This document shows positions 1 through 42,999 of a stretch of DNA of 64,000 nucleotides, in pieces (the stretch's first letter is position 1; the number at the start of each line of letters is the position of its first letter). A program made the translations under genes and the position numbers. Source of the stretch: Macrostomum lignano. Taxonomy: Eukaryota. The notes beneath the pieces were generated by a model. That model had not been told where the DNA came from, ran no database searches, and worked only from the letters and a program-made list of their open reading frames with translations. The DNA is taken from positions 85,717-149,716 of the forward strand of contig NIVC01002688.1 in the NCBI GenBank assembly GCA_002269645.1. The letters run 5' to 3'.

Positions 1-3000
1 TCCAGAACGTGCTGGGTTTCGACATTAGCATTGTCTTCGTCCGCATTAACTGGCTGCGAGTCGTTCACGAACAGCGTGTAGCCTCCGAACCTCTTTCGGT
101 AGTACTCCATCACTGTCGACTGGATGTAGTTTGTCAGGTTGTAGCCCTGCATGCTCTCCACAATGTCGGAGCTCATCAGAGACTTCCGAGCTGGCGTTGG
201 CCAGTCAACGCACTTGGCGCTGTTCGGGTAGTCCTTGTACGAGCACTGACACCACGATGTGTTGCTGGGCAGGTTGCTGGGAGTCTCAGACCACACAGAG
301 CCTCGTCGCTGCGTCTTGCACGGGAAGTCGGGGTTGCTGAACACATCCTCTCGCATGCAGCGAGTTCCGAGGAAGTCCGTGCTGTTCATGTGCAGCATCA
401 GCCGGTTGGACAGGTCGGTCAGGCTGTGGTTGTTTGGGTAGGCGGTCAGGCTGCGGCTCTGGAACACTGATAGGTCCTTGAGGCGAGATCGCTCAGGCTT
501 GCCGAGCATGTACCAGGGCGCCAGCTCCATCGGTGGACTGTCGCCGTCTTTGGGCACAATTTGCAGCAGAGCGAGGGTCAATAGGATAAAGACTGCAGGC
601 AGCACAAACTCGGCGAGGAATCCGATCTTTGAGCGACGCAGAACGTAAAAGCGTTTGAACCAGAGCGCCTTGATCTGCTGCCACATCGGTCGGGTAGTCT
701 GACGCAACCCTTTTAGAGCTGATAGATCTAATGTAGTATTTCTGGACGATAGACGAAGTTTTGAACTGGATAAAAGTTGCCTTTTTTCATTTAGCTTGCT
801 TCCACCAATTGATTCTGGAATCTCCACGAGAGAGGATTTCGGTGTTTCTCCAACCCATTCTGATTCGTAGCCAGTTACAGAGAGAAAGATCTCCTCAAGC
901 GAGCTGTCCTCAATTCCATACGTTGCAATATGAAGATCTGTCATTCTTTTTTCCAAATTACCAAATAGAGAGGCCAACTTAGTCTCGGAAGTGTATGGCA
1001 GCTTTACGTTTATTTCACTGGAAGTACAATCTCCTAGAAAAGCATCTGGAACCTTGGACTGCACCAAATCCAGTACTTTATCCGTGTCGCACTCTAAGGA
1101 CGCCTTTACCAGAGTCAGGGTGTAGCCCTCACCGAACACCCTTTTTAGGAATGTAGGAGAGCCTGAGCACACGAGACGGCCTTTGTTAATGATGCAGATT
1201 CGGTCGCCCAGAATGTCCGCCTCGTCCATGTGGTGGGTGGTCAGGATGATGGTGCGGCCCTGACGGAACTTCGCCAACACGTCCCAGATCGAGCGACGCG
1301 CGTGTGGGTCGACGCCTAAAATTCGCAGTTTTGTTTGTCAAACGGATGGTGGCTGAAAGAAATATCTTGTCGGTACAAAACCGCCGACTCACCAGCGGTT
1401 GGCTCGTCCAGTACGACGACCTTCGATCCGCCGACAAACGCCATGGCGACAGACAGCTTTCGCTTCATCCCGCCTGACAGATTCTTGCTTATTTCGTACT
1501 TCTTTTTCTGTAGGCCGACGTCTGCGATGAACGAGTCAACCTGCTGGGCGACCTCCGTCCGGCTGAGGCCTTTGAGCATGCCGTAGAAGTAGATGTGGTC
1601 CTCCACCGTCAAAGTGTCGAAAAGCACATTGTGCTGAGGACACAGGCCGAGTTGTTGGCGAATCTGGTCCATCTCTGTGCGGATGTCGTACCCGCCGATA
1701 AAGGCGGTGCCCGATGTTGGTGTGTACAAACCCGTCAGAAGGGACATTGTAGTTGTTTTGCCTTAAATTAAGTGCATGCCCAAATATTTCTTTTTGTTTT
1801 CAAAAATCAATTTGATTTTAAAAACTACCTTTTTTAATTTAGACAAAAAATTAGACTTTCCTCCATCATCACTTACCAGCACCATTGTGGCCCAAAAAAG
1901 ACGTCACTTGACCTTCAAAAAAATTGTAGCTGAGGTTTTCTACGGCTGAGATCGTCTTTGCCTTTTGACAGGGCCAGTTTCTTGATGAAAATATCTTGGT
2001 CAAGTTTTTAATTGCAATGCCAACCGGAAGATATTTTGGCTCCGTTTCAAAATGCTCAGGATTCAGATTATGAACAGTTTCGTCACTCAGTGGAAGTCCA
2101 GGACTCGATTCGTTTATGATTCGTTTATGGTCGATAGACTCCTGAGCCTTGTCCTCTAATTTGCTGGTTCGTTTTTCTGGTTTGCTAAATTTCCCGCACC
2201 AAAACGAGGGTTGGAATGGAAAGAACCATGGCTTGGGCACTCCGAACTCGCCGGGGAAAACTTTCTCAAGGTACCAGGTCAACAGCATGAGAATTGCGGA
2301 GTCTATCCATAGCATTAGAATTACCTGAAAGAGCAATGACGGGCTCTGTAAGATTAATGCGCAAAAGCTAAGATTTGAAATCGGTTTTTATCGCAATGAG
2401 ACATTTTTTGACACCACACTATCCCTAGATCGTTATCCAGACTCAGCTTGAGGAAACGAGATCTTGTGAAAACTATTCAAGTAGTTTTTTTTATTTCAAA
2501 CAGAAAATTTCTCACCAGGCCGAAGGACAGCTCTCCATTTGCGGCAGGAGAGTCAAAGAAGTTGTCATACTGCAACCCCACGGAAGCGAGCTCCCAATTG
2601 CTGATGAATTTGCAGCCAACTCCGAAAGCCAACTGGGGGATGAGGCAGCTCAGAATGTAGTGCGTCCGAGTCATGCTGTTGCCAAACGTTTCCAAGAGGT
2701 TGAAGGGTAGGTAGCCGGCGAAGTAGATCACTCTGGCAAAGGCAGCTGCTACGCTCGAGTTTGAGAAGAAAATTGACATGAAGAAGGCCTCAAAAATTGT
2801 GCTCACAACAAAAGACACGATGAAAAAGAACAGCAGAAGTGGGTTCGAGTAAATTATAATTTTTCCCATCGATAGCAGCAAGGTCATCAGGGCACTGGCG
2901 ATAGACATGATGGCAAGAGAGGTGATGAACCAGGAGACCCAGTGCACTCCGTCAGACAGTCCCATGATCTTCATCATCTCTTTCAGGCGCGTCTCTTTCT

Positions 3001-6000
3001 CGTAGACAATGGCGTTTACTAGCAGCGACACGTTGTAAATCCAGGATACAGTCATGAGCATAGGCAGGAAGGAGCCCATGGCGCTTATGAATTTGTCGTC
3101 AATGAAGCAGGCAGTGGGTAACATGGACATGTAGGTCTGGATCGGCGCGTCCACGCCAGAAATTGCAGCCTGGATTCCCTGTTCCAGCAGCTCCTGCAGG
3201 AGAGATCAGGTTTACCTTATCTTTATGGCGGAATTCTAGTATTGCATGTGAATGAATAATGTTGACAGCTACTTTATGCTTTTGGGTACGTTTCACGCCA
3301 TGGTCTTGCTTGGCTTCACTCGTTATATTGACGAGTCGATTGGAACTTATCTGATGGATCAGAACGGTAGCTTTTCGTACACTTTACTCACTACGAAGTA
3401 TCAGCAAGTTCTCACCTGGATGTGCAGAAAAAATGAAGTGAAGTACTTGAAGTCTGTGGGAAACTTAGTCCTGGACGTCTCGGTGTACTTATCGTCGATG
3501 ACATGAAAATAACGAGTGTCATCCACGTCATCCTCCGGAAAACGCAGCCGGTACTTCACGAAGCCAGACGTCTGATTGTCGAACAGCAGGGACGCAATGA
3601 AAAGCGGCTTTTTAGCTTCGCTGTGCTGGCCGAACTCGTCGATGAGGTAGCGGGTGTAGTTTTCCAGAGTCTCCAGGCTGCCGAAGCCGGGCAGCTTGTT
3701 CAACCGGAAGCAGGCTGTCATGTAGTACAGCCGGCGCATCAGCGAGTTTGTCAACTTTATTAGACCACGCCAGCTGCCGAAGCTGCCACCGGGGTCGGGC
3801 TTGGGCGCCAAGAATTTCAGCAGGCTGAGGCACATTTCGCCGTTCGACTTGCTGCCCAGAGTTCCGTGGCAAGCCAGCAATGCAGCCTGGGGTTTTCATT
3901 ATGAATTGAAGAATGAGAAACTGCAGACTCACAGCCGCTACATCTTCGTGTTGGACCTCATGACTGTCTAATTCCCCCCCTCAGAGTCATCGAGTTCATG
4001 GAGCCCTCTTCCGCTCTCCCAATCTCTGGTGTGCACTCACCCTGATCAGTCGCATCCGATTGCTTTTGCTCACAAACTCTTCGAGCTCGGGACTAAAGGC
4101 CTGAGTGAAGCTCTCAGCCAGGTAGGACAGCCTGCTCATGCCTTGTAGAGTCCGGTTCAGCTGCAGGGTTTGGGTACGGAATTTTTATGACTATCAGCAC
4201 AGTTATTAAAATATAATTCAACATCGAGTACGAAATACAACGCTCACTTTTTCGAGAAACTTGCGCGTCCTTGGGGTGTCCGGATAGAACGGGATGACGC
4301 CGAACATGACTTTGAGAATGCTGCCGAGCCCGATATCCGGCAGGACGTAGCGCAGCGATCCAAAAATGGCCGACTGAGAATTCCGATCGAGACAGACTGG
4401 GGAGTTTAAGCGGTATGGCCGGATATCGCGCTTTGTTAATGCGTGTAGTTTCTTCTTTTTTTAACCGTTGCACAATGTTTACAAAGGTCTTCTAAATTTG
4501 AGTTCAAAGATGAACTTACGATAGGTCAGGACGAGTTTCTGAGTTTTTAGAAGAACGAAAAACCATCGAAAAACGAAAAACTTTTTACGCACAATACTCG
4601 CAGGGGATATGTTTCTAACTCTGCAATCCCTACTTTCTTTTAGACGATCTCTTATTACAGAAAACGAGAGTAAAAACTACCGGAATGGTTTACATTTGTT
4701 TGAATTCTTACATTTCTCAGGCGGAACAAACTGCTCTAGCAAATCAGCAGCTTGACCCTCCTGATTTTTCTGCTTCAGCTTTTTAGTATCGTTCCTCCTA
4801 CTTTGCTGCGCTGCCGCCGCGGCCGCACCGACGTCTCTAGCCTTCCGGTGCAGCGCCCTGGCCGAGTCGTTGCCGTGTGTGCTGCCCTTCAGCGAGGCGA
4901 ACTGCTCGACCGGCAGCGACATCAGCGGCTGCAGCTGCTTGCGCAAGCGTTTCGCCACCTTGCTGAACACGGAGCGGCCGCTGCCGCACAGCACTCGGCT
5001 GAGCCGCAGAATCCCCCGCGTGGCCTGGTCCGAGTTGCCGCCGAGCCCGCCAGCCAGCGAGGCAGTCAAGTTCCACAACTCGTCGAGGGCGGCCAGTCGA
5101 CCGTTGAGTTTCAAATTTTTCAGCTGCGGAGGAGCAGCGGTTGTTGGTATGGCCTTGGCTTTACATGTGCTTTGACTTATGCGCACTGGTTCGCAAATAC
5201 AAACTTCTGCTCAGTTCCAAGCGTACGCAGTGGCAGCACTGGATGACAACGACCTGTATTGTTATTCGGTAAAAATTTCAGGTCGTCAGTGGAATTCAAT
5301 TTTTACTCACCCCAGAAAGCAGCGTCTTCAAGTTAGTCAGGTCATTAAGTTCCAGTTCAATTAGATGTGGATTAGTTTCGGTGGAAACCATCTGGGTTGA
5401 GTAGCGAAATATCGATATCTGTATTATTTGTACTTCGTATATGTATTGTATACGTGTTATTTGTATCTATAACATATCTATAAGTTCAGCTTCTGGAACT
5501 CCATCTGTTCATTTCGTCTTACCTGATCCAGGGCGGCATCCATGTCGAACTGCGACTTCAAATTTTCACGGAATTTTGCCTGTTCACAGAGTGTCGCCAC
5601 AGTCAGCCATCCGTCATCGCCTCCGCCACCGCTGCCACAGACTACGGCTGGTAGCGTTTCCGTCATCCGCATCAGCGGCTCCAGCATCAGCCGTTCCACC
5701 GGGCCTGCAGACAAATGCCAGCGCTGTGGGTTTTGGGCACGAGTGAGGGTTGCATTGTGCGGGGTTCGGGCATGAGTGAGGATTGCATTGTGCGGGGTTC
5801 GGGCACGAGTGAGGGGCTGCATTGTGCGGGGTTCGGGCATGAGTGAGGATTGCATTGTGCGGGGTTTGGGCATGAGTGAGGGCTGCATTGTGCGGGGTTC
5901 GGGCATGAGTGAGGGTTGCATTGTGCGGGGTTCGGGCACGAGTGAGGGCTGCATTGTGCGGGGTTCGGGCACGAGTGAGGGCTGCATTGTGCGGGGTTCG

Positions 6001-7510
6001 GGCATGAGTGAGGGTTGCATTGTGCGGGGTTCGGGCATGAGTGAGGGTTGCATTGTGCGGGGTTCGGGCATGAGTGAGGATTGCATTGTGCGGGGTTCGG
6101 GCATGAGTGAGGGCTGCATTGTGCGGGGTTCGGGCATGAGTGAGGGTTGCATTGTGCGGGGTTCGGGCACGAGTGAGGGCTGCATTGTGCGGGGTTCGGG
6201 CATGAGTGAGGGTTGCATTGTGCGGGGTTCGGGCACGAGTGAGGGCTGCATTGTGCGGGGTTTCGGGTAGAGGCAAAATGCAGACAGACCAGATGCTCAC
6301 TTTTGGAAATCGAAATTCTGCCTTTGCAAAATCTTTTTTCTGCGCTACCGTCGCGTCCACCCCGCTAAGCAGGGCCGTTGCGCCGCCGAACACCGAGCTG
6401 AGCTGTATAAGCTTCATGTCTGGGGAAACAAGGGAATGGACTTTCTCTGATCATCTAATTAAACGTTAGTTTTCTAAGCACTCTCTTTGCTTCCACATAA
6501 GCTGTGTCGTTGCTCACTGCTCACCTGTGTCATTGGCACCGGCGGGCACGGCCATGACAGCCTTCGCAAACTTCCTGACCGTGGGGTTGGTCAGAACCAG
6601 GTTGGCTGCTCGCAACACCTGGGTTATGTTTCGGAACCTGGAATATGCAGGAATGAGGACAGACAGGTACACCAGCTAGATTGGGTCATGGAAACCCAGA
6701 CCTAGAAATTGGAAAGGTTACGAGCTATCTGCTGACCCAACAGCAGCAGCCCGACCGGATCGGGGAGTCTTTGACACTAATAAATAGAATTGGAACTGCT
6801 GCTTCACCAGTTAAATTGGCTCATGTACTACTAGAGATTAATTAACTGGAATTGAAACGCCAATAAAGTTTGCCTTGCTGGCTCCTTACTCGGTGTCGTT
6901 GAACAGCCCCGCGTCCGAGCTGAAGTTCTGATCGCCCTGCTGGCAGACGCCCAGGTGGCAGAAGGCCCGGAGCGCCGCCAGCGGCCCCTTCGAGGCCAGG
7001 GCGGCCGGCTTGAACTGGCAGGCCGACGAGGCGTGTCTGAAGTCGCGCGAGTGCCGGACAATCAGCAGGAGAAGGAATGACAGCAGCGGGGCCAAGATCT
7101 CTAGCGCTGTGGCGCCCTGGTGGGGTGAGAGAAGGAAGTGGGTGCTACTTCACAGCCGCAGCCCACTGAGCTACGGATTGCACTGAGCCTTGTGACTGAA
7201 AATCCAGTCAGTAGCACAGAAACTGAGCCCTGTGACTGAAAATCCTGTCAGTAGCACAGAAACTGAGCCCTGTGACTGGAAATCCAGTCAGAAGCACAGA
7301 AACTGAGCCCTGTTACTGAAAATCCTGTCAGAAGCACGGGAGCCCGAAAGTCAATCGTATGCGATTTTCCTGACCCCCAGTGGCACAATTGCTGCCCTGG
7401 TCCTGCCTGGTGCTTTGTAAAGCGAGGCTCTAAAAACTTACAGGGTTTCGCTGCTTCAGCTTGAAATTTTTCCACTGCAGGATGTAGATCTTCTTGAGAA
7501 AGCCCAGCAT
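1..7510 (-). CDS. ABCA: ABCA-subfamily full transporter, copy A (multi-exon; 5' two-thirds, runs off window start)
   Basis: Exon 1 7510-7442 [23 protein letters not shown] followed by gtaagt; exon 2 ...[23 protein letters not shown]; TMD1 motif [17 protein letters not shown] (2477-3154); NBD1 [26 protein letters not shown]; last exon stays open to position 1. Confidence 0.93.
1318..1757 (-). CDS. ABCA: ABCA copy A NBD1 exons (Q-loop, signature, Walker B)
   Basis: ORF 1316-1747: [33 protein letters not shown]; GT-AG intron before GVDPHARR. Confidence 0.9.
5730..6264. repeat. 33-bp intronic minisatellite (~16 copies) in ABCA copy A
   Basis: Unit GGTTCGGGCATGAGTGAGGGTTGCATTGTGCGG; lies between the FRFPK|gtgagc donor and the next ECD1 exon. 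Confidence 0.95.
7180..7335. repeat. ~40-bp tandem repeat (3-4 copies) in intron 1 of copy A
   Basis: Repeated CTGAGCCCTGTGACTGAAAATCCTGTCAGTAGCACAGAAA. Confidence 0.85.
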
Positions 7511-9445
7511 AGTCGGCAGAGCAGTTTGGAGTTATGCAGCTGCAACTCAGAAGCGGTGACTTGAAATCGCGCATGAATTCATGCTATTGAATTAGATTCG
7601 CAACGCTATCTGCTGATGACAGGAGCGCTTGGACTGAGTATTCTAACAAATTAACAAACCTGATTGCACAAAGCGTCAGAAGTTACTAAAAGCAGAATGA
7701 GCTTTCTGGCCATAGACGCTAAAAAAAGACTCGTAAAAAGGTACGAGTAAAAATCAGGTTGGCGAAAAACTAAGAAAAGCCTTAATTAGTACAAAGGTCA
7801 ACTTGACAAGTTGACAACTTGAACCAGGATTAAGTTGTCCTTGCCTTAGCCCTTAGTATAGAAATTGCTCGGACAGTCACAGTGAAGGCTGGGTACACAT
7901 TAATTGTCAATTTGGTGGCAGACTATAGTGGCAGACTCTTGTGACAGACTCTTGGATCGGGAGGATGTGAGTGCACATATTCTAAATATTTAGTCGCGGG
8001 GGGGCACTAACCAAGCAATGCAGTCGACCCGCATCAAAAGATCGAGGTGGCAATAAAAACATTTCTATCGAAGACAAATATTTTAGTCAACGTATTTGCT
8101 TATCACTTAAATGATAAAAACCTGATAAAACAATTTTGCATCGAGAATTTAAAGTTTAGTCTGCTGTTTATTCAAAAGTATGGCATATGATTTCCTGTTT
8201 TTTCAAAAAATAATTATGCGGACTTTCGATATTTTGTTTATTTAAGTTGCGATAAAGTTATGTATCATTTTGAACAGCGCTTGTATCTAAGAAACAGTAA
8301 GAAACTTCTCCCCTGAAAATGGTATTATTGTTCTAATTGTAGTATAATAAAAAATAGAAAGTTTGCTGAGTACTCCGAAAATTCTCCTAGAAGCTTACTT
8401 CAAACAAGTGCGGGTTTTTCATTTCGGTATGTACAATATATTTTCTGATAAATGCCACCCTTACATGTATGGAATGTTGAAATAAATTAGTATAGCATAC
8501 ATATATTAACATAAAAGCGAAAAGGTGAATGAAACGAATAAATTAATTTAATTTAACTCTCTTGCATTATTGAATATTGTCTTTCTAATACCAGTACTTT
8601 CACTTTAGTGATTCATTGTATGGTTGTATTGAATGAATATCATTTTCTTATGCATCATGATTGTGGGTGATGGTGAAATTCCTTTGCTTCATTCAAGAAG
8701 TATAAGCTATTTATCTTTATCATCATATTTATCATCAATGGTTTTTATTTTGCTTAGACAGTGTATTATTTGATCTATTAAATTTTGTAAATTTAGGTAT
8801 ATTTTTTTAAATCTCTCATCAATATATCTACAAACAAATATTTTATTTCTAGCATATTGGATTTGTTCCAGTTTAGCCATTTTTGCTGATCAAAGAGTCC
8901 ATATTTGTGATAATTTTACCTTTGCTTCTATTTTTAATTTTAGGGAATAATCTATAGTATATGTACATATGGCTGTTAGGCATAGCTTCTTCTACTTTGG
9001 TAGCTATATGAGAAATTGATATAAATAAATAAAATTAAATTATTGCTTTGATAAAAAACAATTTATTTTATTTGAAATATATTACAAAACTACTTTCATT
9101 GTTTCAAGATGTTAAAACATGCTCGTTTTTTAAATTTCATTAAATTTCATATAATTTCACAAATATTAAAAAGCATTTTCATATGTATTTCTATAAAGTA
9201 TTTATATATCACTTTATAACTGATCATTGAATTTAATTATAATTCCATGTTCCAATGTCTTTTGTCTGATTATTAATTTTAGGCTTTAAAGCACTTGTGT
9301 TTGCTGTTCATCGCATTTTTGTTTTTGAATTCAACAGAAATCAGTTTTTGTTAGCATAGAAAGTGATTTATGTATCATCATTATCTGCCATCGCGAAACC
9401 TTAAGTATTGAGCCAAGTAAGCGAAATTTACTTTTTAGAATCGAA
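7511..9445. promoter_or_regulatory. Divergent intergenic region between the start codons of ABCA A and B; candidate bidirectional promoter
   Basis: ATG of A at 7510 (-) and ATG of B at 9446 (+); no ORFs; strongly AT-rich from about 8050 to 9440. Function is inferred from position only. Confidence 0.45.
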
Positions 9446-12400: not shown

Positions 12401-12758
12401 TGCTGTTCTGTCGTTCCAGATGACCTCAACTTTGCCCAACAAGCAGACGATCAGCGTGGAGCTGTCCGACGTCACCAACATTGTGCTCCTCTTTCAGGAG
12501 GTCAGAAAAAGCTTTGCTTTTGCGTGTTTCACTTTCTTATTTTAAGGAAATCTGCTTCTGCTTTCCAGACTACTGATATAAGTAGCAATCCTCGCATTTT
12601 AATATTAAAATCTAAGAAACAATGAAAGACAACCTTGTTGGATTCATTTCCGTAGAACTTGTGCCGCTCATTCATCTTCTGATTCAGTTCGACCAAATTA
12701 GAAAGGACGGCACGCTGAATGTCTTCAGCGACATCTACAGAAACTTGAGAGCTCTGAT

Positions 12759-12805
<47 letters not shown>

Positions 12806-29800: not shown

Positions 29801-32800
29801 TCCAGCCGGACACGCCGATCTGGTCAGGCGAGCCGATGCTCTTGTTAGCCAGAGCCCTCATGATAGCGTTGCTGAGGGTGTTGAGGTAGGCAGGCCCGGA
29901 CACGTAGCCCCGGTTGTCGAACCAGACTTGGTTCACAATGGAGCTCAGATTTTCTTGTTGTCGACTGCTCTCCAGCCAACTGTACAGCTGCTCCGTGCTC
30001 CTAATTGGGGATCAGATATTAGCGATTCGACTGACTGACTGACTGACTGACTGACTGACTGACTGACTGACTGACTGACTGACTGACTGACTGACTGACT
30101 GACTGACTGACTGACTGACTGACTGACTGACTGACTGACTGACTGACTGACTGACTGACTGACTGACTGACTGACTGACTGACTGACTGACTGACTGACT
30201 GACTGACTGACTGACTGACTGACTGACTGACTGACTGACTGACTGACTGACTGACTGACTGACTGACTGACTGACTGACTGACTGACTGACTGACTGACT
30301 GACTGACTGACTGACTGACTGACTGACTGACTGACTGACTGACTGACTGACTGACTGACTGACTGACTGACTGACTGACTGACTGACTGACTGACTACTG
30401 ACTGACTGACTGACTGACTGACTGACTGACTGACTGACTGACTGACTGACTGACTGACTGACTGACTGACTGACTGACTGACTGACTGACTGACTGACTC
30501 TGACTGACTGACTGACTGACTGACTGACTGACTGACTGACTCTGACTGACTGACTGACTGACTGACTGACTGACTGACTGACTGACTGACTGACTGACTG
30601 ACTGACTGACTGACTGACTGACTCTGACTGACTGACTGACTGACTGACTGACTGACTGACTGAATTAAAGGAGCCTACCTGTCAGATGTATTGCTGCCAA
30701 TAAGCGTGTCCATTTGCCTTAGCACCAACGAAGTCTCCTTTCCAGCGCGGGTGGCGTCTGCACTGACTGGCTGCGAGTCGTTCACGAACAGCGTGTAGCC
30801 TCCGAATCTCTTTCGGTAGTACTCCATCACTGTCGACTGGATGTAGTTTGTCAGGTTGTAGCCCTGCATGCTCTCCACAATGTCGGAGCTCATCAGAGAC
30901 TTCCGAGCTGGCGCTGGCCAGTCAACGCACTTGGCGCTGTTCGGGTAGTCCTTGTACGAGCACTGACACCACGATGTGTTGCTGGGCAGGTTGCTGGGAG
31001 TCTCAGACCACACAGAGCCTCGTCGCTGCGTCTTGCACGGGAAGTCGGGGTTGCTGAACACATCCTCTCGCATGCAGCGAGTTCCGAGGAAGTCCGTGCT
31101 GTTCATGTGCAGCATCAGCCGGTTGGACAGGTCGGTCAGGCTGTGGTTGTTTGGGTAGGCGGTCAGGCTGCGGCTCTGGAACACTGATAGGTCCTTGAGG
31201 CGAGATCGCTCTGGCTTGCCGAGCATGTACCAGGGCGCTAACTCCATCGGTGGATGTTCACCTACTTTAGGCACAATCTTGAGCAGAGCGAGGGCCAGGA
31301 GGATAAACATTGGAGGCAGCACAAACTCGGCGAGGAATCCGATCTTTGAGCGACGCATTACGTGGAAGCGCTTGAGCCAGAGCGCCTTGATTTGCTGCCA
31401 CAAAGGCCGCCGCGTCCTTCGTACTTTCTGCTGACTCTGAGACTCTGCTGATATATTTTCTCTTGAACTGCGGCTGCTCTCACCGCCTTCTGTATTGCTA
31501 CTCATCGCTTGTTCCAAGTACCGCCGTCGTACACTTTCCCTATAAGACGGGCGAAACTCGACAACGGAGGAGTTACAGAGCAGTTCCTCTTTTTTTTTAT
31601 CAGGCAGCCCAGTCACAGCGAGAAAAATCTCTTCGAGGGAGCTGTCCTCGATACCGTATGAAGAGATTCCCAGCTGTAGGGGAAGTTCGTCCAAAGTTTC
31701 AAACAGGTCAGCAAATAGAGGCACAGAGCTGTATGGCAGCCTGATGTTGATCTCACTGGATGTGCACTCCGCCAGATTTGCCTCTGGGACCTCAGACTGC
31801 ACAGAATTCAGCACTACATCAAGCTCGCAGTCTGGCGAAGCCTTCACCAGAGTCAGTGTGTAGCCCTCACCGAACTCTTTCTTCAGAAACATCGGAGAGC
31901 CTGAGCACACGAGACGGCCCTTGTTGATGACGCAGATTCGGTCGCCCAGAATTTCCGCCTCGTCCATGTGGTGGGTGGTCAGGATGATGGTGCGGCCCTG
32001 ACGATACTTTGCCAATACGTCCCAGATCGAGCGACGTGCGTGGGGGTCCACGCCTGAAGTTAAATATAATGGAGTACAATGGAGAATTCAAGAATGGGAT
32101 TCCAAACGCAGACATTTCATACTTTATGTCGAAGGAACGCTTCATCTGGTTCTGAGACGGTCTAAACCCACAAAAGTTTTGTCAATACAAAAGACTTCAA
32201 GAAAAATGGCTAAGTATAATTAAGTCAACTCTATTGGTTAATATAACGAAATTTTGCTGATTCTGATAATTAAACACAGACAAAAATTGTTGAACTTCAT
32301 GGAAACAACATGAAGCGGCGGTATTATAGTTGCAGCATATTCTGGTCAACAGGGCTCTCTCTTTTTCTCGCTTTGTAAGAGAGAAGAATGTCTTCAAATG
32401 TCACCCAGGCCACCCGCAGAGCTCACCGGCAGTTGGTTCGTCCAGAACAACGACTTTCGATCCGCCTATAAATGCCAGGGCAACAGACAGCCTTCGCTTC
32501 ATCCCGCCTGACAGATTACCGCAAATCTCGTGTCTCTTTTTTTCGAGGCCCACATCGGCGGCCAAGAAGTCAATCTGTACGTTCAGCTCCGCCCTGCTGA
32601 GGCCCTTCAGCATGCCGTAGAAGTAGATGTGGTCCTCAACCGTCAGGGTGTCGAACAGCACATTGTACTGAGGACACAGGCCGAGGTGCCTGCGAATCTG
32701 GTCCATCTCTGTGCGGATGTCGTACCCGCCGATGAAGGCGGTGCCCGATGTCGGCAGAAACAATCCAGTGAGAATCGACATTGTCGTGCTTTTTCCTGTG

Positions 32801-35800
32801 GCCAAAAGGTTACGTAAACTTTAATAGATCTGAGTTTGAATCAGCATACGAAAATGAATATCGGGTTCAGCAGCAGCAGAGCTTCGAGAACTAAAATCAG
32901 ATTTGTCACTGTTAGCTAGCGTTGCAACTCACCGGCGCCGTTGTGACCCAGAAAGGAGGTGATCTGATTTTCGAAGAAGTTGTAGCTGAGGTCGTCAACA
33001 GCAGTGAGAGGCTCGGTTTGTCTCCGGCAGGAGAAGCAACCGGGCCGGTAGATCTTCGACAAATTCCTAATCGCAACGCCCACTTTCAGGTTCGCGGGCT
33101 CGTCTTCGAAGTGCTGCTTGCTGCTTTTATTGGAATCCACTGAGACTGATTCTACTTTGCCATTGGAAAATGCCAGGCTGCTGTCACTGACACCATGTTT
33201 GCTTGTGTTCCCGAACCAGAAGGAGTGCAGGAAAGGAAAGTACCACGGCTTCGGGACTCCGTACGGGCCGGGGAATAACTTTTCCAGGTACCAGGTGAGC
33301 AGCATTAGAATGGCGGAATCGACCCACAGCATCAGAATCACCTAAAGTCGTTTGAAGGCGAGTTGACAATACAGATAGAAATATTTGATTAGACAGAAAT
33401 TATTCAGTGGGGGACTCTCAATCATAAATTTTTCATGACGCATAGTTTTAGTAGTATATTAAAATCAGTATGTACTGCATAAAGCTGTGCTAAAATATCC
33501 ATAATTTTAGTCCCGCAAATCGTCAAAGCAAAATCTTACCAAGAAAAATGACAGCTCCTCACTCCAGAGCGGCGCGCTGAAAAAGTTATTGGCCTGCAGT
33601 CCGATCACGGCCAGCTCCCAGTTGCTGATGATCTCGCTGCCAATGCCGAATGCAATCTGCGGAATCAGAAAGCTCACAATGAAGTGGGCTTGCCTCATGG
33701 TGCTGGTGAACTGTATGACCACCAGGTAGATCACGTAGCCGACAATGTAGGCCACGGCTGCGACCGCGGCCGCTACGCTTGCGTTGGAGAAGAAGATCGA
33801 TATGAAGAAGGCCTCACAAATCGTGCTGACCGCGAATGAGACGATGAAAAGGAACAAAAGCCCGGATTTGAGAGGCCGATTATTTGCCCAGCCTTCAGCA
33901 TCACTGTTATCAGAGTGCCCGAAACCAGCATGATTGCAAATGAGGTGATGAACCAGGAGACCCAGTGCACTCCGTCGGACAGTCCCATAATCTTCATCAT
34001 CTCTTTCAGCCGGGTCTCTTTCTCGTAGACAATGGCGTTCACCAGCACGGACACATTGAATATCCACGTGAAAATCAAGAGCATGGGTAAGAAAGCATTG
34101 GTGACTTTGGCGAAGGTGTCATCCATGTAGCACACTGATGGGAACATTGTCAAGTAGGTCTGGAGCGGCGCGTTCACGCCTGTAACTTCTGCTTGAATTC
34201 CGTGTTCGAGCAGCTCCTGGTGTAAAATGAGAAAATTAAAAAGAACTGCGAGTTAAAACAAGACGCGTCCCAGAGTCGTTGCAGGTAACACAGGTAAAAT
34301 AGAAAAGAAGTGACTCTAAAACGAGCGACACAAGTGACTCTGGGGCGCTTCTATAATGATGGGCAGTAAAGTCGAACCTGAGGCGTGCAAGAGTCGCTGA
34401 AGAGTCACTGAATTGTGTCTAAAGCGCATCTGAGTCACTCTTTGAAATAAAAATGTGCATTTCAGATTTTTAATAACTTTACGAGTGTATTTAGTCTGCT
34501 TGAGTTAGTAGAAAGGCCACCCCCAGGGATGGGCAAGCTGACCACCCCGAACAACATCCGTGATCTTCGCGAGTTGGTCCGAGATACCGGCCGGATGAAG
34601 GTCGCCGATGCCTCCTCTGTGAACCTGCCGACTACTTGCGGGGCTAAACCCTCGCACCAGGGTTAAACCTTCGTTTCATGTAAGTAAGTAAGGTAGAAAG
34701 TTAAGCGCTAACACAACGACTCTTATACTAATTTTGCGACTCTTTTACGATGTTACAGCTCCCGTGTTGCTCTCGTGACTCAACAGTGGCCTCTGCATTA
34801 CAGTCGTTTAAGTACTCGCATTTTTAAAAGTCCCAACAGGTACCCCAGAGTCTCTAGAGTCACTAGTGAGTTGTTTACTATCACCCTTCATCGGTTCTTG
34901 TCACGGTTGCTTTTTCAGTGGGAGTAGCTGGTATGCAGTTTGAAATCAGTAATCAAATTTTTCCAGTGAAAATATTTTTCTTGAATGACCTAATGGAAGA
35001 AAAGCTCACCTGAATGTATATGAAGAAAGATGTAAAGTACTTAAAATCGGTTTGAAAATTCGTTCGAGGCTTTGGTTTGAAATGGCTGTCCAATACTTTG
35101 AAGTGCCTGGTGCTGTCAATAGAGTTTTCTGGAAATCTTAAGCGGTACTTCACGAAGCCCGGCGCCAGCTTGTCGAAGAGCAGAGACGCAATGAACAGCG
35201 ACTTGTTCACTTTCTTGTAGTCTTCCAGTTCGTCGATGAGGAAGCTGGTGCGGTTTTCCAGCGACTTCTCGGTGCTGAAGCCGCGAAGCTTGCTAAGGCG
35301 GAAACAGGCGGTGGCGAAGTACAGCCTGAGCATTAGTGTGTTCGTTGTATTCAGGGAGTCCTTCCATGTAGAGCTGGTATTCGACTGAGCGGAAGGCGGA
35401 TCTGGTTGCAGAAACAGCTCCAGGTTCTTGCAGTTGCGACCGTTGGGCTGCCCGGCGTAGTAAATTTGGCAGTGACTCAGCAGTGTCTGAATGTGTGAAA
35501 CGAAGGCATACGCATCGAATGCAGACACGCAGTACAACCATATAGTATAAGGCAGCCCAGGCTCACGGGCTAAGGTCTGCGGTACTACACACGGTCCCTC
35601 TCTGTTTTGGTGTAAGAATGGGTAGAGAACCTTCCTCCATGCTGATTCACAAGCCGGTCTAGGGGTTCGCCTCCAGCATATGCTTAATGAGGCTGGACTG
35701 ACAGGGCTCCAGTGGGGGGCAACCCATCCGTGGCCTTGACTTTTGATTTGGTCATGTTGGGTACGCGGGTTCTCCTGGAAGTGTACCTTTGCGTATCAGG

Positions 35801-38800
35801 TGCCTCTGGCTACGGATCTAAGGGACTGGTGTTGCCTTTTGAATTTAACAGGGTATGCGGCCAGCCCACCAGCCTCTGGAGACAGCCTCTTTGTCTATCA
35901 AGAGCCCAGTGTAGCACCGCACTGATGGTCTTTTGGCTCAGCCTCTTACCAGGTTCTTAACTGAGGAGTTTCTCAGTTGCTAGCCAAGAAGAAACGCAAA
36001 AGCAAGCAGGAAAGCCAAGTCCGACAAGTGTCACCAATACTGCACGGAGCTGGAGGGCGCTACTTCACGCGTGGTCAAGACCCTCACTCTTGACGAGATG
36101 TCAAAGCTCTTAGTTCTCAAAAGATCAGGTGTATTACCCTCCAGTACGTGCCCAAGGCCCGGAAAGAGGCTACGATTGTTTTCATTTCCAAAGCTGGGAA
36201 GGGAGACTGTGAGTGCATCACTCTGCCAAAGCCTACCGCCCCATCAGTCTGACGTCCCTCGTACTCAACCAGAATGCTGTTCGATCTGGATGTTTCATCG
36301 AAAGCGCTGCACGCCATTGCCGACAAGCTCATGTTAATGTGCCGTTTGAAACCTTTAGATGAGGCTTAGCTATGTGCGCAACTTATGAAATTTCCACCGT
36401 GGAAAACTTTGAGGTTGGGAAAGAATATGAAATTTCGAGCTTATGAAACACCCGGCCCCCCTCCCGCCGAGGGTTTGCGGAATGAGCGGTGATGATTCCC
36501 CGCTGCATCCGGATGCCCAAAGACCCCTGCAGCTGATTCAAACTTAATATACGTAAGAATCTTTGCTGTTTCAGAGGCAGCCAAGTCAGCGCAATGCCCA
36601 AACCGTCCAAAACACCCGAAACAAAATCGCACCAACCCGCATATTCGCCATCTCGCTGCTGTTGGTGATGAAGTTGGCGATGCGAGGACTCGTTGACTTC
36701 ACGAAGTTCTCCGCTATGTAGGATGCCCAGGACGCTGCAATAAGGGTCTCGTTCAGCTGGAGTGTTGAATTATAAGTGTAAAGATGCTTGCATTGTTTTC
36801 AACTCTCAAAATTCAGTTTGTTTGCTTCATCGGCTTACTTTCTTGAGAAACTTTCGCGTCCTTTCTGATTCAGGATAGTAAAGGATTTCTCCGAACATGA
36901 GCCGTTTGAGGCCGGAGAACCCGAGCTTGTCGAGCAGCCAGTCAGGAAGCAGCAGGATGGCATTCTGATAGCGCTTGTCTGAGCAAACTGCGGGTGAGAA
37001 ACGTCCTTTCTCTTCTTGCATTCAAAATTTAAAACTCTTTACTGCACAGTGAAGAGGTCTGATAAAATGGCACAAATATTTTTGATTTCCAACTCTAGAA
37101 GATAAAATCAGGTGATAGTTGAATGTCTTGATGATACTGACTGTGAGCACAAGTTGACATTTTGTGCTGAGTCATAATGCACACTCAGCAACACGACAAT
37201 GAAAAGTCGCGACTCTATGCGCCAGTGAGCAATTTCTCTCGGACTATTATGAAATAATAAATACGAGAAAACTGATCGGGGCAGCTTTAATCCGTCCAAC
37301 CCTCGCACACCGCTCCCCCCCCCCTACTTCATTTCTCAACTTAAGTCTGCCGCGGCGTAGCTAAGATGCCTCACCTGCTAAGATTGAGACTTTACCTGCC
37401 CTCATAAAAGTGGCGACCACAGACGGAATCTTCTGTGATGGCGAAATTTCGATGTTGCTGAGTATCAATAGAAGATGCAAGTTGAGATAATTCTTGGGCT
37501 GCAGGAACACCCAAAGTGCTCCGAAAGCATATAAAAAACGTGCATTCTGAGGACTGCATTAGAAAACAAGGTGCTCACACTCCTCTGGAGGCAGAATGGT
37601 TGTCAGATTGACTGTCTCCTCTGAATCGTTTGTCGATTTCTCGATTAATTCGTTTGGCTCGAAGTCTTCGGCTACATCTTCGACCATCTCGCGGTCCAGG
37701 TAGTCCGACAGGACGTTCTTGCCGGAGCCGCAGACATGGCCGGCTAAGATCTTTACAGACCGCAGCCAGCCCTTCAGTCTGCTGCTCGACAGGCCTTCAG
37801 TCACATTCACGGCGAGGTCGCGCATCTTTTGAAACACGAGCAGCGTTCCATCGTTGCTCATCTCGTTAATCTGCGGGATATTTTAATTCAACGTAATGTA
37901 CGAAAGAAGAGCCTCGTAAGAGCGTGTGTTGTGCTGTCAGATCTACCATGATATCTATTTCAATTTGCCAATCTTCAACCATGGAGCTTACCTGAGAAAG
38001 AAGCATCTGCAGACTCTTGAGGTCACTGGGGTTGAGCAGAACGCTGCGCTTGTTGCTGTCTGTAGAGGCCATCTTTTAATGAAAATGATTGGGTTGGAGT
38101 TGGAGTCACAAGGCTTAATTTGCTGCTAAGCTCTTTAACGCATAAGTAACCTCTAGTCTCTGGAAAGCACAGCTCTAGACAGGTGTCAAGAACTCCATCC
38201 CTCTCACCTGGGCCCGAACCGCGTCAAAATCCAGCTGAGACCGGAGGTTTTCGCGGAACCGCGGCTGCTTGCAGAGCTCCCGCACTGCCCGGGTCCAGTT
38301 GGCGGTGGCGCCGGCCCCGCTGCACAGGATATTGGGCAGCCCGCTCTGCGACAGCATCAGGCCAGCCATGCCGGGGCCCATGGACAGGTCCAAGAGCTGC
38401 AATGGGTGATGTCTAATTGTACAAAATTCTAACACGGAGTCCCGTAGGAAGTGGTGAGCATGTCCTAAGACTTTATCCGTACAGCTCATAGTTAATACTC
38501 AATAGTTAATATTTCATTGTTCTCAGTTCATAGGCACATTCAGGCAGTGAAATTCAGCTAATTTTATTCCACTTTACCTTGGGAAACGGCACTTCCGCCG
38601 TCTCGAAAGACGCTCTCTGCTCCTTTGTTACCTTGACGCCATCGAACAGCGCGCTGCCGTTGTTTTTGAAAAGCGAGCGGAGTTTGATCTTCTTCATCTC
38701 TGCAATGTCATGACCCATTTTCATGCAGGGACGGGTGATTGCAGGGATAGGAGAGAGCAGGGATAGGAGAGTGCAGGGACAGGAAAGAGCAGGGATAGGA

Positions 38801-40641
38801 GAATGCAGGGACAGGAGAGAGCAGGGACAGGAGAGAGCAGGGACAGAAGAGTGCAGGGACAGGAGAGTGCAGGGACAGGAAAGAGCAGGGATAGGAGAGT
38901 GCAGGGACAGGAGAGAGCAGGGACAGGAGAGAGCAGGGACAGAAGAGTGCAGGGACAGGAGAGTGCAGGGACAGGAGAGAGCAAGGACAGGAGAGAGCAG
39001 GGACAGGAGAGAGCAGGACAGGAGAGAGCAGGGACAGGAGAGAGCAGGGACAGGAGAGTGCAGGGACAGAAGAGTGCAGGGACAGAAGAGTGCAGGGACA
39101 GGAGAGTGCAGGGACAGGAGAGAGCAAGGACAGGAGAGAGCAGGGACAGGAGAGAGCAGGGACAGGAGAGAGCAGGGACAGGAGAGTGCAGGGACAGAAG
39201 AGTGCAGGGACAGAAGAGTGCAGGGACAGGAGAGAGCAGGGACAGGAGAGTGCAGGGACAGAAGAGTGCAGGGACAGGAGAGTGCAGGGACAGGAGAGAG
39301 CAAGGACAGGAGAGAGCAGGGACAGGAGAGAGCAGGGACAGGAGAGAGCAGGGACAGGAGAGTGCAGGGACAGAAGAGTGCAGGGACAGGAGAGTGCAGG
39401 GACAGGAGAGAGCAAGGACAGGAGAGAGCAGGGACAGGAGAGAGCAGGGACAGGAGAGAGCAGGGACAGGAGAGTGCAGGGACAGAAGAGTGCAGGGACA
39501 GAAGAGAGCAGGGACAGGAGAGTGCAGGGACAGCTCAGCTCAGCTCACTTGTGGGGTCGGACAGGGCAGGGCGCGTGGCCGAGGCGGCGAGTGACAGCTT
39601 CTTGATGGTGTTGTGGTTCAGCCAGAAGTTGATCGCGCCCATCACCCGCGATATGTTTCTGAAACTGGAACGAGGCGAATAATAAAATTAGCTGGAACTT
39701 TTCGCCTTGACCAAGGAGAGATCTCACCCCTCGTCAGTCACGAGGTCTTGGTCTGTGTGGAAAGTCTGGGCTCCCTCTCGACAAACTCCCAGGTGACAGA
39801 ATGACCTGAGCACCGCACCCAGGCCGCTCGAAGCCAAGGGGGACGGTTTGAACTGGCAGGCCGACGATCTCTGAAAGAAGTCCTGCGACTGCCGGATGCC
39901 GATGAGGATGGAGATGATCACCAGCGGAGCGAGCAGCTCCATCAAAGTGGAGATCTGCAGAGTTTGAGCGGCGGTGTTGGATGATTCAGCGCTGAATTCG
40001 GGGCAGCCTCATCACTGCGAATCGGGACAGCCTCATCACTGCAATTCAGGACAGCCTCATCACTGCGAATCGGGACAGCCTCATCACTGCGAATCGGGAC
40101 AGCCTCCTCATTGCGAATCAGGACAGCCTCATCACTGCGAATCGGGACAGCCTCCTCATTGCGAATCAGGACAGCCTCATCACTGCGAATCGGGACAGCC
40201 TCATCACTGCAATTCTGGCTGGTTAAGGAGGCCGTAGCCCAGTGGTCAAGTGCGGCGCTCTTATGTGCCAGCGGCCCAGGCTCAACTCTTATTGAACATA
40301 AGAGCTCAAGTGCAGTCACATTAATTTGGGGCTCGGTTGGAATAACGGCTTGGGACTACTTGTGCAATCAACGCAATTGAGGGCAAACCTCCGAGGCACA
40401 GCCTAACGATAAACGAAGTTAGGGCCGCTGTACACTCCTGCCTGTGTGCCTGTGTGTATGACTGCGTACGTATCCGCGCTTGTGCGCCTGCTCAGGGGGA
40501 TTTCAGGAGGAAGTAGAAATGTAAAACCAATGAAACCAGCGCGTCACAAGCGTTGCGCCACCGCGGACTTACCGGCCGTCTCTGCTTCAGCTTGATGTCC
40601 TTCCACAGCAGCACGCAGATCTGCTCACAGGCAGTCACCAT
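26806..40641 (-). CDS. ABCA: ABCA-subfamily full transporter, copy C (complete, multi-exon)
   Basis: Exon 1 40641-40573 [23 protein letters not shown] followed by gtaagt; TMD1 33530-34215; NBD1 [15 protein letters not shown]; 458-aa exon 30675-32051; TMD2 29154-29970; NBD2 27275-28540; last exon 26850-26806 [14 protein letters not shown]. Confidence 0.93.
30028..30662. repeat. (GACT)n tetranucleotide microsatellite, ~155 units, in an intron of copy C
   Basis: Directly visible; starts about 16 nt inside the splice donor of the ECD2 exon. Confidence 0.98.
30678..32053 (-). CDS. ABCA: Large central exon of ABCA copy C (NBD1 end, R1, TM7, ECD2)
   Basis: ORF 30675-32051 with the same motifs as the B central exon. 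Confidence 0.9.
34515..34695 (+). mobile_element. Possible 3' fragment of a non-LTR retroelement in a copy C intron
   Basis: GC-rich segment ending in a (TAAG)3 tail within AT-richer intron; no diagnostic RT motif seen. Confidence 0.25.
38722..39532. repeat. 16-bp intronic minisatellite (~50 copies) in ABCA copy C
   Basis: Unit GCAGGGACAGGAGAGA / GCAGGGACAGAAGAGT between two ECD1 exons. Confidence 0.95.
39995..40212. repeat. 24-bp tandem repeat (~9 copies) in intron 1 of copy C
   Basis: Unit CGGGACAGCCTCATCACTGCGAAT. Confidence 0.92.
40228..40300 (+). pseudogene. tRNA-derived fragment / SINE head
   Basis: A-box-like TAGCCCAGTGG and B-box-like GGCTCAACTC at tRNA-like spacing; acceptor stem does not close. 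Confidence 0.35.
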
Positions 40642-42822: not shown

Positions 42823-42999
42823 CATGTCTGAACTAGGACTTTCAGTTAATGACCATTCTTGACCAGCCATTAAGCAGAGGTCATTACCGTGAAGTGACAT
42901 TTCGATCAATGCCAATGCTCAAGGGCAAGTTGCTGAGATGTCAAGGCCATGGAATTCTAGATATTAACCTAAATTAACCTTCCCGGATGAAGTCATCGT

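What the first reader, a model, noticed from the sequence alone, without database searches (positions are those of the whole stretch)
1..40641. Inverted ABCA triplet that is a patchwork: homogenised motor domains, diverged ECD1
Three paralogs share an identical 23-codon exon 1 and conserved intron positions. ECD1, the R1 linker and short luminal loops are hard to align at the DNA level, while NBD and ECD2 blocks are nearly identical with abrupt edges inside exons. This suggests segmental gene conversion that keeps the ATPase core uniform while ligand-facing parts diversify. The alternating orientation could let neighbours pair as fold-backs (inference).
Basis: partly seen in the sequence, partly recalled or inferred. 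Interest (0 to 1): 0.7.

Follow-up and report, generated by a model that had tools for sequence, protein, structure and literature searches.

The report
Gene-conversion mosaic in flatworm ABCA triplet
Three old, neighbouring lipid-transporter (ABCA) genes of the flatworm Macrostomum lignano keep overwriting short stretches of one another, a well-known process (gene conversion between neighbouring copies) that is seen here unusually clearly because the genome carries the cluster three times.

Summary
The window is the last 64 kb of Macrostomum lignano contig NIVC01002688.1. It holds three ABCA1/4/7-like genes in alternating orientation: A (-, cut by the window start), B (+, 19 exons, about 2,350 aa) and C (-, 19 exons).

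- **Background divergence:** the paralogs are old. Away from the tracts, 47-56% of four-fold sites differ and introns cannot be aligned.
- **Tracts:** six sharply bounded tracts are 97-99.4% identical, including silent sites and four whole introns.
  - A=B, NBD1 (B 16105-16699)
  - A=B, TM7/ECD2 (17293-17929)
  - A=B=C, ECD2 core (17457-17929, to 17941 for B=C)
  - B=C, two TMD2 patches
  - B=C, 19102-20666 (end of TMD2, NBD2, R2)
- **Replication:** the two other subgenomic copies of the cluster show the same tract edges. Within tracts, B and C of one locus share locus-specific variants; in one locus they differ by 0.13% against 1.2-1.8% to their counterparts. One short patch went in opposite directions in two loci.

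Recurrent, ongoing interlocus gene conversion is strongly supported. The adaptive reading is not: homogenisation is pair-specific, and the only three-way tract is luminal ECD2. "Identical exon 1" holds for length only. C carries a 1-bp frameshift here that the other two copies lack. This is a known kind of phenomenon.

The parts
1..7510 (-). Gene A, an ABCA1-like paralog. Exons 1-13 are in the window: 7510-7442, 7116-6890, 6637-6525, 6419-6301, 5723-5523, 5123-4712, 4396-4248, 4160-4041, 3886-3416, 3193-2516, 2324-1877, 1761-1393 and 1315-1. It is cut by the window start inside exon 13 (ECD2). The assembly annotates it as 2,318 aa.
   Evidence: Gene model: 1,563 codons with no stop. Annotation length.
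9446..20853 (+). Gene B, a full-length ABCA1/4/7-like transporter (BOX15_Mlig028120g1). The 19 exons are 9446-9514, 9593-9819, 11339-11454, 11549-11670, 12134-12334, 12688-13018, 13300-13448, 13530-13649, 14095-14574, 14714-15391, 15508-15991, 16094-16462, 16540-18016, 18127-18922, 19008-19500, 19615-19825, 19967-20225, 20315-20662 and 20743-20853. The public annotation adds a 27-aa exon in intron 5 and a different 3' end.
   Evidence: Pfam gives ABC_tran twice, ABC2_membrane_3 twice and R1_ABCA1. The best solved structure is human ABCA1, 1,290 bits. P0033 matches with 0 mismatches.
26806..40641 (-). Gene C, an ABCA1-like paralog (BOX15_Mlig019968g2). The 19 exons are 40641-40573, 39954-39728, 39658-39549, 38699-38578, 38396-38208, 37870-37579, 36987-36839, 36756-36637, 35486-35010, 34216-33540, 33341-32933, 32795-32427, 32053-30679, 30000-29205, 28585-28093, 27978-27768, 27626-27368, 27278-26931 and 26850-26806.
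   Evidence: It is annotated as only 1,487 aa because of the frameshift.
33863..33864 (-). A 1-bp deletion (frameshift) in exon 10 (TMD1) of C. The window reads AATCC-GGGC where the copy on NIVC01000571.1 reads AATCCTGGGC. The third copy is annotated as a full-length 2,274-aa protein that starts at the same exon 1.
   Evidence: Exon 10 is 677 nt in C against 678 nt in A and B. L002 is intact at this site. P0035 is full length.
16105..16699 (+). A-B conversion tract T1, covering NBD1 from just after Walker A (B residues 997-1169) and including the whole of intron 12. The partner in A is 1156-1750. It is 595 bp with 5 differences.
   Evidence: (intron 12 is 100% identical; exon 12 is 97.8%).
17293..17929 (+). 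A-B conversion tract T2, covering TM7 and the first half of ECD2 (B residues 1367-1579). The partner in A is 49-685. It is 637 bp with 8 differences.
17457..17941 (+). Three-way core in ECD2 where A, B and C are all alike. The partners are A 49-521 and C 30754-31238. B-C has 4 differences in 485 bp. A-C has 3 in 473 bp. All pairs share the 3' edge at about 17930-17942.
   Evidence: The 4-fold sites differ at 0/20 to 1/20 per 40-codon window.
18176..18339 (+). B-C tract Ta, at the end of ECD2 and the start of TMD2. The partner in C is 29788-29951. It is 164 bp with 1 difference.
18520..18733 (+). B-C tract Tb in TMD2. The partner in C is 29394-29607. It is 214 bp with 6 differences. At 18577-18592 the window's B carries the C-type haplotype, while in the third locus C carries the B-type haplotype.
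19102..20666 (+). B-C tract Tc, covering the last TMD2 helix, NBD2 and R2 (B residues 1905-2311) and including introns 15, 16 and 17. It is 1,565 bp with 15 differences. With its partner it forms a 1.57-kb inverted repeat around a 6.26-kb spacer.
   Evidence: (98.9% over 1,575 bp).
26927..28491 (-). The partner arm of tract Tc in gene C.
20854..26805 (.). The tail-to-tail spacer between B and C. It holds minisatellite arrays: a 39-bp unit repeated 77 times at 21769-24759, a 40-bp unit at 25205-25655 and a 34-bp unit at 25995-26376.
7511..9445 (.). The head-to-head spacer (1.9 kb) between the ATGs of A and B.

Best explanation
A, B and C are old tandem paralogs of an ABCA1/4/7-like lipid transporter. 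Their silent sites are close to saturation. They undergo recurrent, short-tract, non-allelic (interlocus) gene conversion.

**Inferred mechanism.** A break in one copy is repaired from a neighbouring copy by homologous recombination (synthesis-dependent strand annealing or heteroduplex repair). The template sequence is copied in, silent sites and introns included.

**Why the edges are stable (inferred).**
- Conversion needs a stretch of near-identity to start. Already-similar segments therefore keep being re-homogenised, while diverged flanks act as stable edges.
- The long, unalignable, minisatellite-filled introns of the 5' half also act as barriers. So do introns 13 and 14, which differ greatly in length between B and C.
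- This would explain why the 5' half (ECD1, TMD1) escapes conversion.
- It would also explain why the B-C tracts in exons 13, 14 and 15 stop 50-190 nt short of introns 13 and 14.

**What is shown.**
- The identity is a mosaic.
- Introns and 4-fold sites are homogenised inside the tracts.
- The tract edges are the same in all three subgenomic copies of the cluster.
- Exchange continued independently in each copy after the copies diverged, and in both directions.
For: - **Introns.** Introns inside tracts are 100%, 100%, 98.6% and 96.6% identical (I12 for A-B; I15, I16 and I17 for B-C). Introns outside tracts are 4.5-55% identical.
- **Silent sites.** Four-fold sites differ at 2.7-4% inside tracts and 47-56% outside. 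Fisher p runs from 1e-17 to 1e-45, and 0 of 20,000 permutations reach the observed runs.
- **Replication.** The same tracts with the same edges occur in NIVC01000571.1 and NIVC01002100.1.
- **Site patterns across six copies.** In tract Tc, 0 sites are paralog-specific, 8 are shared by B and C within a locus but differ between loci, and 11 are mixed. In the non-tract stretch 16540-17285, 157 sites are paralog-specific and 9 are mixed.
- **Distances in Tc.** In locus 3, B and C differ by 0.13%, against 1.15-1.79% between either copy and its B or C counterparts in loci 1 and 2 (0.70% for C2 versus the window's C). In the window B-C is 0.96%. In locus 2 it is 1.97%.
- **Direction.** At 18577-18592 the window's B has the C-type haplotype, and C of locus 3 has the B-type.
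- **Independent assembly of the copies.** Differences persist between the copies (15 in 1,565 bp), so the copies were assembled separately rather than collapsed.
- **GC bias (weak).** GC3 is 0.785 inside tracts and 0.707 outside. Short introns inside tracts have GC 0.43-0.52, against 0.31-0.37 for seven of the nine short introns outside (the other two are 0.43 and 0.45).
Against: - No sequencing reads were examined.
- All three loci come from one PacBio-based assembly of a neopolyploid. In that assembly 36% of assembly length lies in chimeric scaffolds and 93% of read pairs map to several places (PMC10733133). Some singleton differences, and the frameshift in C, may therefore be errors.
- The A-B tracts could not be replicated. 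A is cut off at the end of the contig in L001 and is not covered in L003.
- A's 3' half is outside the window.
- No sister-species sequence was available to root the tracts.
- The barrier role of the introns and the GC bias are inferences from small numbers.
Confidence: 0.88

Rival explanations
1. Assembly or polishing artefact. The identical tracts were created when reads from different paralogs, or from the three subgenomes, were mixed during consensus calling or short-read polishing of the Mlig_3_7 assembly.
For: The genome is a neopolyploid that is hard to assemble. 36% of assembly length lies in chimeric scaffolds and 93% of read pairs multi-map (PMC10733133). Divergence between B and its counterpart in a second locus (B') is higher in the tract exons 16 and 18 (1.7-2.4%, though 0% in exon 17) than in most non-tract exons, which could reflect noise in repeated sequence. 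The 1-bp frameshift in C looks like a typical long-read indel.
Against: Polishing cannot turn roughly 50%-identical introns into identical ones. The tracts are in frame and collinear. They recur with the same edges in three separately assembled contigs. The copies keep private differences. Locus-specific variants shared by B and C differ between loci, which random mixing of six copies would not produce. Tracts of 0.16-1.6 kb are much shorter than PacBio reads, which anchor in unique flanks.
Confidence: 0.04
2. Selection-maintained homogenisation. Conversion happens along the whole genes, but selection keeps it only where uniform function is needed (the ATPase core) and removes it where diversity of ligand-facing domains is favoured (ECD1).
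For: The tracts cover NBD1 (A-B) and NBD2 plus R2 (B-C). ECD1 is the most diverged part, with pN of 0.34-0.38. Models in which selection opposes conversion exist for RHD/RHCE (cited in PMC3966223).
Against: C's NBD1 is not homogenised. The Walker A part of NBD1 lies outside the A-B tract. The only three-way tract is luminal ECD2, and TMD2 patches are converted too. ECD1 pN/pS is about 0.55 with a saturated pS, which gives no sign of positive selection. Unalignable introns offer a purely mechanical barrier.
Confidence: 0.07
3. Purifying selection alone. The identical blocks are just the most conserved protein domains of old paralogs.
For: NBDs are the most conserved parts of ABC transporters. 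TMD1 reaches 70-87% DNA identity with no conversion.
Against: Introns and 4-fold sites are identical inside the tracts. In conserved TMD1, where A-B nucleotide identity reaches 87% per 40-codon window, 4-fold sites still differ at 4/16 to 12/14. ECD2 is normally a variable domain.
Confidence: 0.01

Closest known systems
Interlocus (ectopic) gene conversion between adjacent paralogs, as catalogued in Caenorhabditis and Drosophila (for example C. elegans hsp16 inverted modules, hsp70-7/8, col-12/13; PMC3966223, PMC3924832)
   Same: Short tracts are copied between neighbouring duplicates in either orientation. Identity is a mosaic, silent sites are homogenised, and the process depends on existing identity.
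   Different: These genes are very large (about 2,300 codons, 19 exons) and otherwise saturated. There are several separate tracts per pair. One tract is shared by three copies. Three subgenomic replicates show independent events.
Human RHD/RHCE (own knowledge; modelling cited in PMC3966223)
   Same: Two multi-exon membrane-protein genes lie tail to tail and exchange exon-scale segments. Hairpin or fold-back pairing in cis has been proposed. Selection is thought to oppose homogenisation at some sites.
   Different: RHD and RHCE are young and about 97% identical throughout. Here the background is saturated and only islands are alike. A directly oriented pair (A-C) also shares a tract.
Arm-to-arm conversion in palindromes such as the human Y ampliconic palindromes (own knowledge)
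   Same: The B-C tract Tc forms a 1.57-kb inverted repeat, 99.0% identical, around a 6.3-kb spacer and is kept alike by conversion.
   Different: The arms are short and lie inside two otherwise diverged genes. The rest of the 'palindrome' is not homogenised.
ABCC6 and its pseudogenes ABCC6P1/P2, and CYP21A2/CYP21A1P (own knowledge)
   Same: Conversion occurs between an ABC-transporter gene, or another gene, and a nearby copy that may be defective. In this window C carries a frameshift.
   Different: C is intact in the other two subgenomic copies, so it is not an established pseudogene. No disease context applies.

Membership tests
ABCA subfamily full transporter (ABCA1/4/7-like) | Two halves, each with a membrane domain and an ATP-binding cassette | tested here: met
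   Pfam gives ABC_tran twice (1e-58) and ABC2_membrane_3 twice (2e-45) on B.
ABCA subfamily full transporter (ABCA1/4/7-like) | Walker A, signature and Walker B motifs in both NBDs | tested here: met
   GHNGAGKS at 988, LSGG at 1087 and VVVLDEP at 1107. GVNGAGKT at 2023, YSGG at 2122 and IVFLDEP at 2142.
ABCA subfamily full transporter (ABCA1/4/7-like) | Large extracellular or luminal domains after TM1 (ECD1) and TM7 (ECD2), plus R regulatory domains | tested here: met
   Alignment to human ABCA1 structures (7TBZ, 5XJY) covers residues 391-892, 949-1206 and 1384-2337, 1,290 bits. ABCA4 and ABCA7 are the next best matches. R1_ABCA1 domain at 2256-2320.
ABCA subfamily full transporter (ABCA1/4/7-like) | Lipid export or flippase activity | not testable with these tools
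   No functional data.
Interlocus gene conversion / concerted evolution | Sharply bounded high-identity tracts in otherwise diverged paralogs | tested here: met
Interlocus gene conversion / concerted evolution | Homogenisation of sites not under protein-level selection (introns, 4-fold sites) | tested here: met
Interlocus gene conversion / concerted evolution | Phylogenetic incongruence: paralogs of one locus group together inside tracts and by paralog outside | tested here: met
   Six-copy site patterns and distance matrices across three subgenomic loci.
Interlocus gene conversion / concerted evolution | Read-level or population-level confirmation of the tracts | not testable with these tools
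   No reads or population data were available.
Fold-back (hairpin) conversion between inverted neighbours, RHD/RHCE or palindrome type | Partners in inverted orientation with near-identical arms around a spacer | tested here: met
   B-C tract Tc: arms at 19102-20666 and 26927-28491 with a 6,260-bp spacer.
Fold-back (hairpin) conversion between inverted neighbours, RHD/RHCE or palindrome type | Exchange limited to, or clearly favoured between, inverted partners | tested here: not met
   A and C are in direct orientation and share the ECD2 core at 99.4%. This could also arise through B as a go-between.
Fold-back (hairpin) conversion between inverted neighbours, RHD/RHCE or palindrome type | Identity highest next to the centre of symmetry | tested here: inconclusive
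   True for B-C, where Tc lies at the 3' ends next to the spacer. False for A-B, where the 5' ends next to the head-to-head centre are the most diverged.

The most novel reading that the evidence does not exclude
The first half of ECD2 (B 17457-17941, about 160 codons) may be a true conversion hotspot or a selected 'common interface'. It is the only segment kept alike in all three paralogs and in every copy available (A from the window only; B and C from all three subgenomes), and all share one 3' edge. More broadly, the three subgenomic replicates may form a natural triplicate experiment. From it, the rate, tract length, direction and GC bias of interlocus conversion since the recent genome duplication of M. 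lignano could be measured. That would include conversion between a frameshifted copy and its intact neighbour.
Probability: 0.2. Interest if true: 0.5.

Novelty: new member of a known kind. Interest (0 to 1): 0.35.

Why it matters
- **Phylogeny and dating.** This is a clean, replicated example of how conversion makes old paralogs look young in places. Trees or duplication dates for flatworm ABCA genes built from the NBDs or ECD2 would be wrong.
- **Genome analysis.** Tracts 97-99.4% identical within a locus, multiplied by three subgenomes, are a trap for read mapping, expression counting and RNAi or CRISPR targeting in a model flatworm.
- **Measuring conversion.** Because the cluster exists in three recently diverged copies, the rate and direction of conversion can in principle be measured against the age of the genome duplication.
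- **Limits.** It does not reveal a new mechanism.

Tried and rejected
- The first protein search, with the ECD2 exon alone, found only distant ABCA relatives and did not identify the organism. The full-length B model did.
- My first model of B exon 4 (acceptor at 11504) was replaced by 11549, using paralog exon lengths. The public annotation agrees.
- My B model lacks a 27-aa exon and uses a different 3' end from the annotation. Neither touches the tracts.
- Purifying selection as the sole cause was rejected on intron and 4-fold-site identity.
- Positive selection on ECD1 could not be assessed properly, because pS is saturated at 0.6-0.8.
- The control distance matrix for exon 10 failed because L003 does not reach that far into B. 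The site-pattern control was used instead.
- A's 3' half and the other two A copies could not be fetched.
- Literature searches found no earlier description of this cluster or of gene conversion in M. lignano ABCA genes.

Full report
**What is in the window.**
- The sequence is eukaryotic, with short GT-AG introns and many minisatellites.
- A self-comparison shows three collinear copies of one large gene in alternating orientation.
- I built exon models by translating open frames, matching them between copies and choosing splice sites that keep the frame.
- Gene B (+, 9446-20853) has 19 exons and encodes about 2,350 residues with no stop.
- Pfam finds two ABC_tran domains, two ABC2_membrane_3 domains and an R1_ABCA1 domain.
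- The best solved structures are human ABCA1 (1,290 bits), then ABCA4 and ABCA7. Both NBDs have Walker A, signature and Walker B motifs.
- Gene A (-, ATG at 7510) is intact for 1,563 codons and is cut by the window start inside exon 13.
- Gene C (-, 40641 to about 26806) has the same 19 exons.

**Where it comes from.**
- The full-length B model hits Macrostomum lignano proteins at 98% identity.
- P0033 (BOX15_Mlig028120g1) matches B with no mismatch.
- Its locus shows that the window is the last 64,000 bp of contig NIVC01002688.1 of assembly GCA_002269645.1, Mlig_3_7.
- In that annotation A is 2,318 aa, B is 2,454 aa and C is only 1,487 aa.

**Checking the observation.**
- Exon 1 is 23 codons and phase 0 in all three genes, but only 61-69% identical in sequence. 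"Identical" therefore holds for length only.
- All intron positions and phases are shared.
- ECD1 exons are 45-68% identical. The linker between R1 and TM7 is 23-62% identical with indels.

**The tracts.** Against that background there are sharply bounded tracts:

| Tract | Pair | B coordinates | Size and differences | Content |
|---|---|---|---|---|
| T1 | A-B | 16105-16699 | 595 bp, 5 differences | NBD1 after Walker A, all of intron 12 |
| T2 | A-B | 17293-17929 | 637 bp, 8 differences | TM7 and first half of ECD2 |
| Core | A=B=C | 17457-17929 (to 17941 for B-C) | 3-4 differences per pair | ECD2 |
| Ta | B-C | 18176-18339 | 164 bp, 1 difference | end of ECD2, start of TMD2 |
| Tb | B-C | 18520-18733 | 214 bp, 6 differences | TMD2 |
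| Tc | B-C | 19102-20666 | 1,565 bp, 15 differences | last TMD2 helix, NBD2, R2, introns 15-17 |

Most edges lie inside exons.

**Conversion or constraint.**
- Introns inside tracts are 96.6-100% identical. Those just outside are 10-50% identical.
- Four-fold degenerate sites differ at 8/189 (A-B), 14/343 (B-C) and 2/73 (A-C) inside tracts. Outside they differ at 170/302, 200/429 and 185/360, which is close to saturation.
- Fisher p values run from 1e-17 to 1e-45. The longest runs of identical silent sites (57, 82, 67) were never reached in 20,000 permutations.
- TMD1 is well conserved as protein (A-B up to 87% DNA identity per 40-codon window) but still has 4/16 to 12/14 four-fold sites different.
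- Purifying selection alone is therefore excluded.

**Independent replication.**
- M. lignano is a recent polyploid whose assembly holds three subgenomic copies of most loci. These differ by about 2.2% overall and 1.1% in coding sequence (PMC10733133).
- I recovered the two other copies of this cluster. NIVC01000571.1 gives L001 (part of A, all of B) and L002 (all of C). NIVC01002100.1 gives L003 (all of C, the 3' 5.4 kb of B).
- They are collinear with the window at 96-99% identity and show the same B-C tracts with the same edges.
- Site patterns across the six B and C copies are decisive.
  - In the non-tract stretch 16540-17285, 157 sites separate all B from all C and 9 are mixed.
  - In tract Tc no site separates B from C. 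Eight sites differ between loci but are shared by B and C of the same locus, and 11 are mixed.
- Distances agree. In the third locus B and C differ by 0.13% in Tc, while either copy is 1.15-1.79% from its B or C counterparts in loci 1 and 2 (0.70% for C2 versus the window's C). In the window B-C is 0.96%, and in the second locus 1.97%.
- At 18577-18592 the window's B carries the C-type haplotype and the third locus's C carries the B-type.
- Exchange has therefore continued separately in each locus since the subgenomes split, and in both directions.

**How it most likely works.**
- Shown: the mosaic, the homogenised neutral sites, the shared edges and the locus-specific exchange.
- Inferred: breaks are repaired from a neighbouring copy by homologous recombination. 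Because this needs near-identity to start, similar segments are re-homogenised while diverged flanks and unalignable introns act as barriers.
- The gene structure fits this.
  - The 5' half has exons of 69-484 nt (one of 678 nt), separated by introns of up to 1.5 kb that are full of copy-specific minisatellites.
  - The 3' half has exons of 1,477, 796 and 493 nt.
  - The two diverged islands between B-C tracts are centred on introns 13 and 14. These are 110 and 85 nt in B but 678 and 619 nt in C.
- GC3 is somewhat higher in tracts (0.785 against 0.707) and in-tract introns are more GC-rich. This is a weak hint of GC-biased conversion.

- Gene conversion is supported.
- The claim that it serves to keep the ATPase core uniform while ligand-facing parts diversify is not.
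  - NBD1 is homogenised only for A-B, and only after Walker A.
  - C's NBD1 is not homogenised.
  - The only three-way tract is luminal ECD2.
  - ECD1 has pN/pS of about 0.55 over a saturated pS, with no sign of positive selection.
- Fold-back pairing is possible for B-C, where Tc forms a 1.57-kb inverted repeat around a 6.26-kb spacer. It is not needed in general. A and C are directly oriented and share a tract, and the A-B tracts lie far from the head-to-head centre.
- Reviews of nematode paralogs likewise conclude that conversion occurs in either orientation (PMC3966223).

**Artefact?**
- The assembly is known to be difficult: 36% of assembly length lies in chimeric scaffolds and 93% of read pairs multi-map. 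I saw no reads.
- Several points argue against an artefact.
  - Polishing cannot make unalignable introns identical.
  - The tracts recur with the same edges in three contigs.
  - The copies keep private differences.
  - The locus-specific variants shared by B and C differ from locus to locus.
- I put the artefact at about 4%.
- Single differences, and the 1-bp frameshift in C, may well be errors. The window reads AATCC-GGGC, the second locus reads AATCCTGGGC, and the third locus's C is annotated full length.

**Verdict.** This is a real and unusually well-replicated case of recurrent interlocus gene conversion in a triplet of old ABCA paralogs. It is a known kind of process in a new place. 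It matters mainly for ABCA phylogeny, for read mapping and gene targeting in this model flatworm, and as a possible yardstick for conversion rates after a recent genome duplication.

Noticed in passing
window 33863-33864 (- strand, exon 10 of C): A 1-bp deletion shifts the frame in TMD1 of gene C, and the public annotation of this copy starts downstream of it (1,487 aa). The site is intact in the second subgenomic copy (L002), and the third copy's C is annotated full length (2,274 aa). It is either early gene loss in one subgenome or a long-read indel error.
   Followed up: yes
window about 56,700-63,000: A fragment of a Maverick/Polinton-like element. There is an ORF with an integrase core domain (57279-57893), a phospholipase-A2-like domain ORF on the opposite strand (56748-57491), and a protein-primed type-B DNA polymerase split over three consecutive ORFs (59582-62770), so it is probably broken by frameshifts. 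I examined it ORF by ORF only and did not assemble it.
   Followed up: partly
window 5728-6267, 10727-11284, 11687-12102, 30029-30663, 38725-39533, 39998-40210: Copy-specific minisatellites and one microsatellite fill introns of A, B and C. The units are 33, 43, 30, 4 (GACT repeated 160 times), 16 and 24 bp. Array lengths differ between the subgenomic copies. They make the 5' introns unalignable between paralogs.
   Followed up: partly
window 21769-24759; 42204-42824; 43503-44516; 52654-53676: Large intergenic arrays. They are a 39-bp unit repeated 77 times (98% matches) in the B-C spacer, a perfect 15-bp unit repeated 41 times, an 18-bp unit repeated 56 times, and a 1-kb CT-rich low-complexity block. 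These produce the long spurious ORFs on both strands.
   Followed up: no
L001 18473-23783, against window 20861-21007: The second subgenomic copy has about 5.3 kb of extra sequence just downstream of B that the window lacks. It also has a roughly 100-bp AT-rich insertion in intron 16 of B (at B coordinate 19911).
   Followed up: no
window 12335-12687 (intron 5 of B) and 20826 onwards: The public annotation of B includes a 27-aa exon inside intron 5. It also splices from KRLK near 20826 to a further 3' exon that adds 102 residues. Neither has a counterpart in my models of A and C. They may be B-specific or alternative exons.
   Followed up: partly
window 12760-12810 (exon 6 of B): A run of 16 glycine codons (GGN repeat) sits in ECD1 of B only. 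The annotation removes 13 of them as an intron.
   Followed up: no
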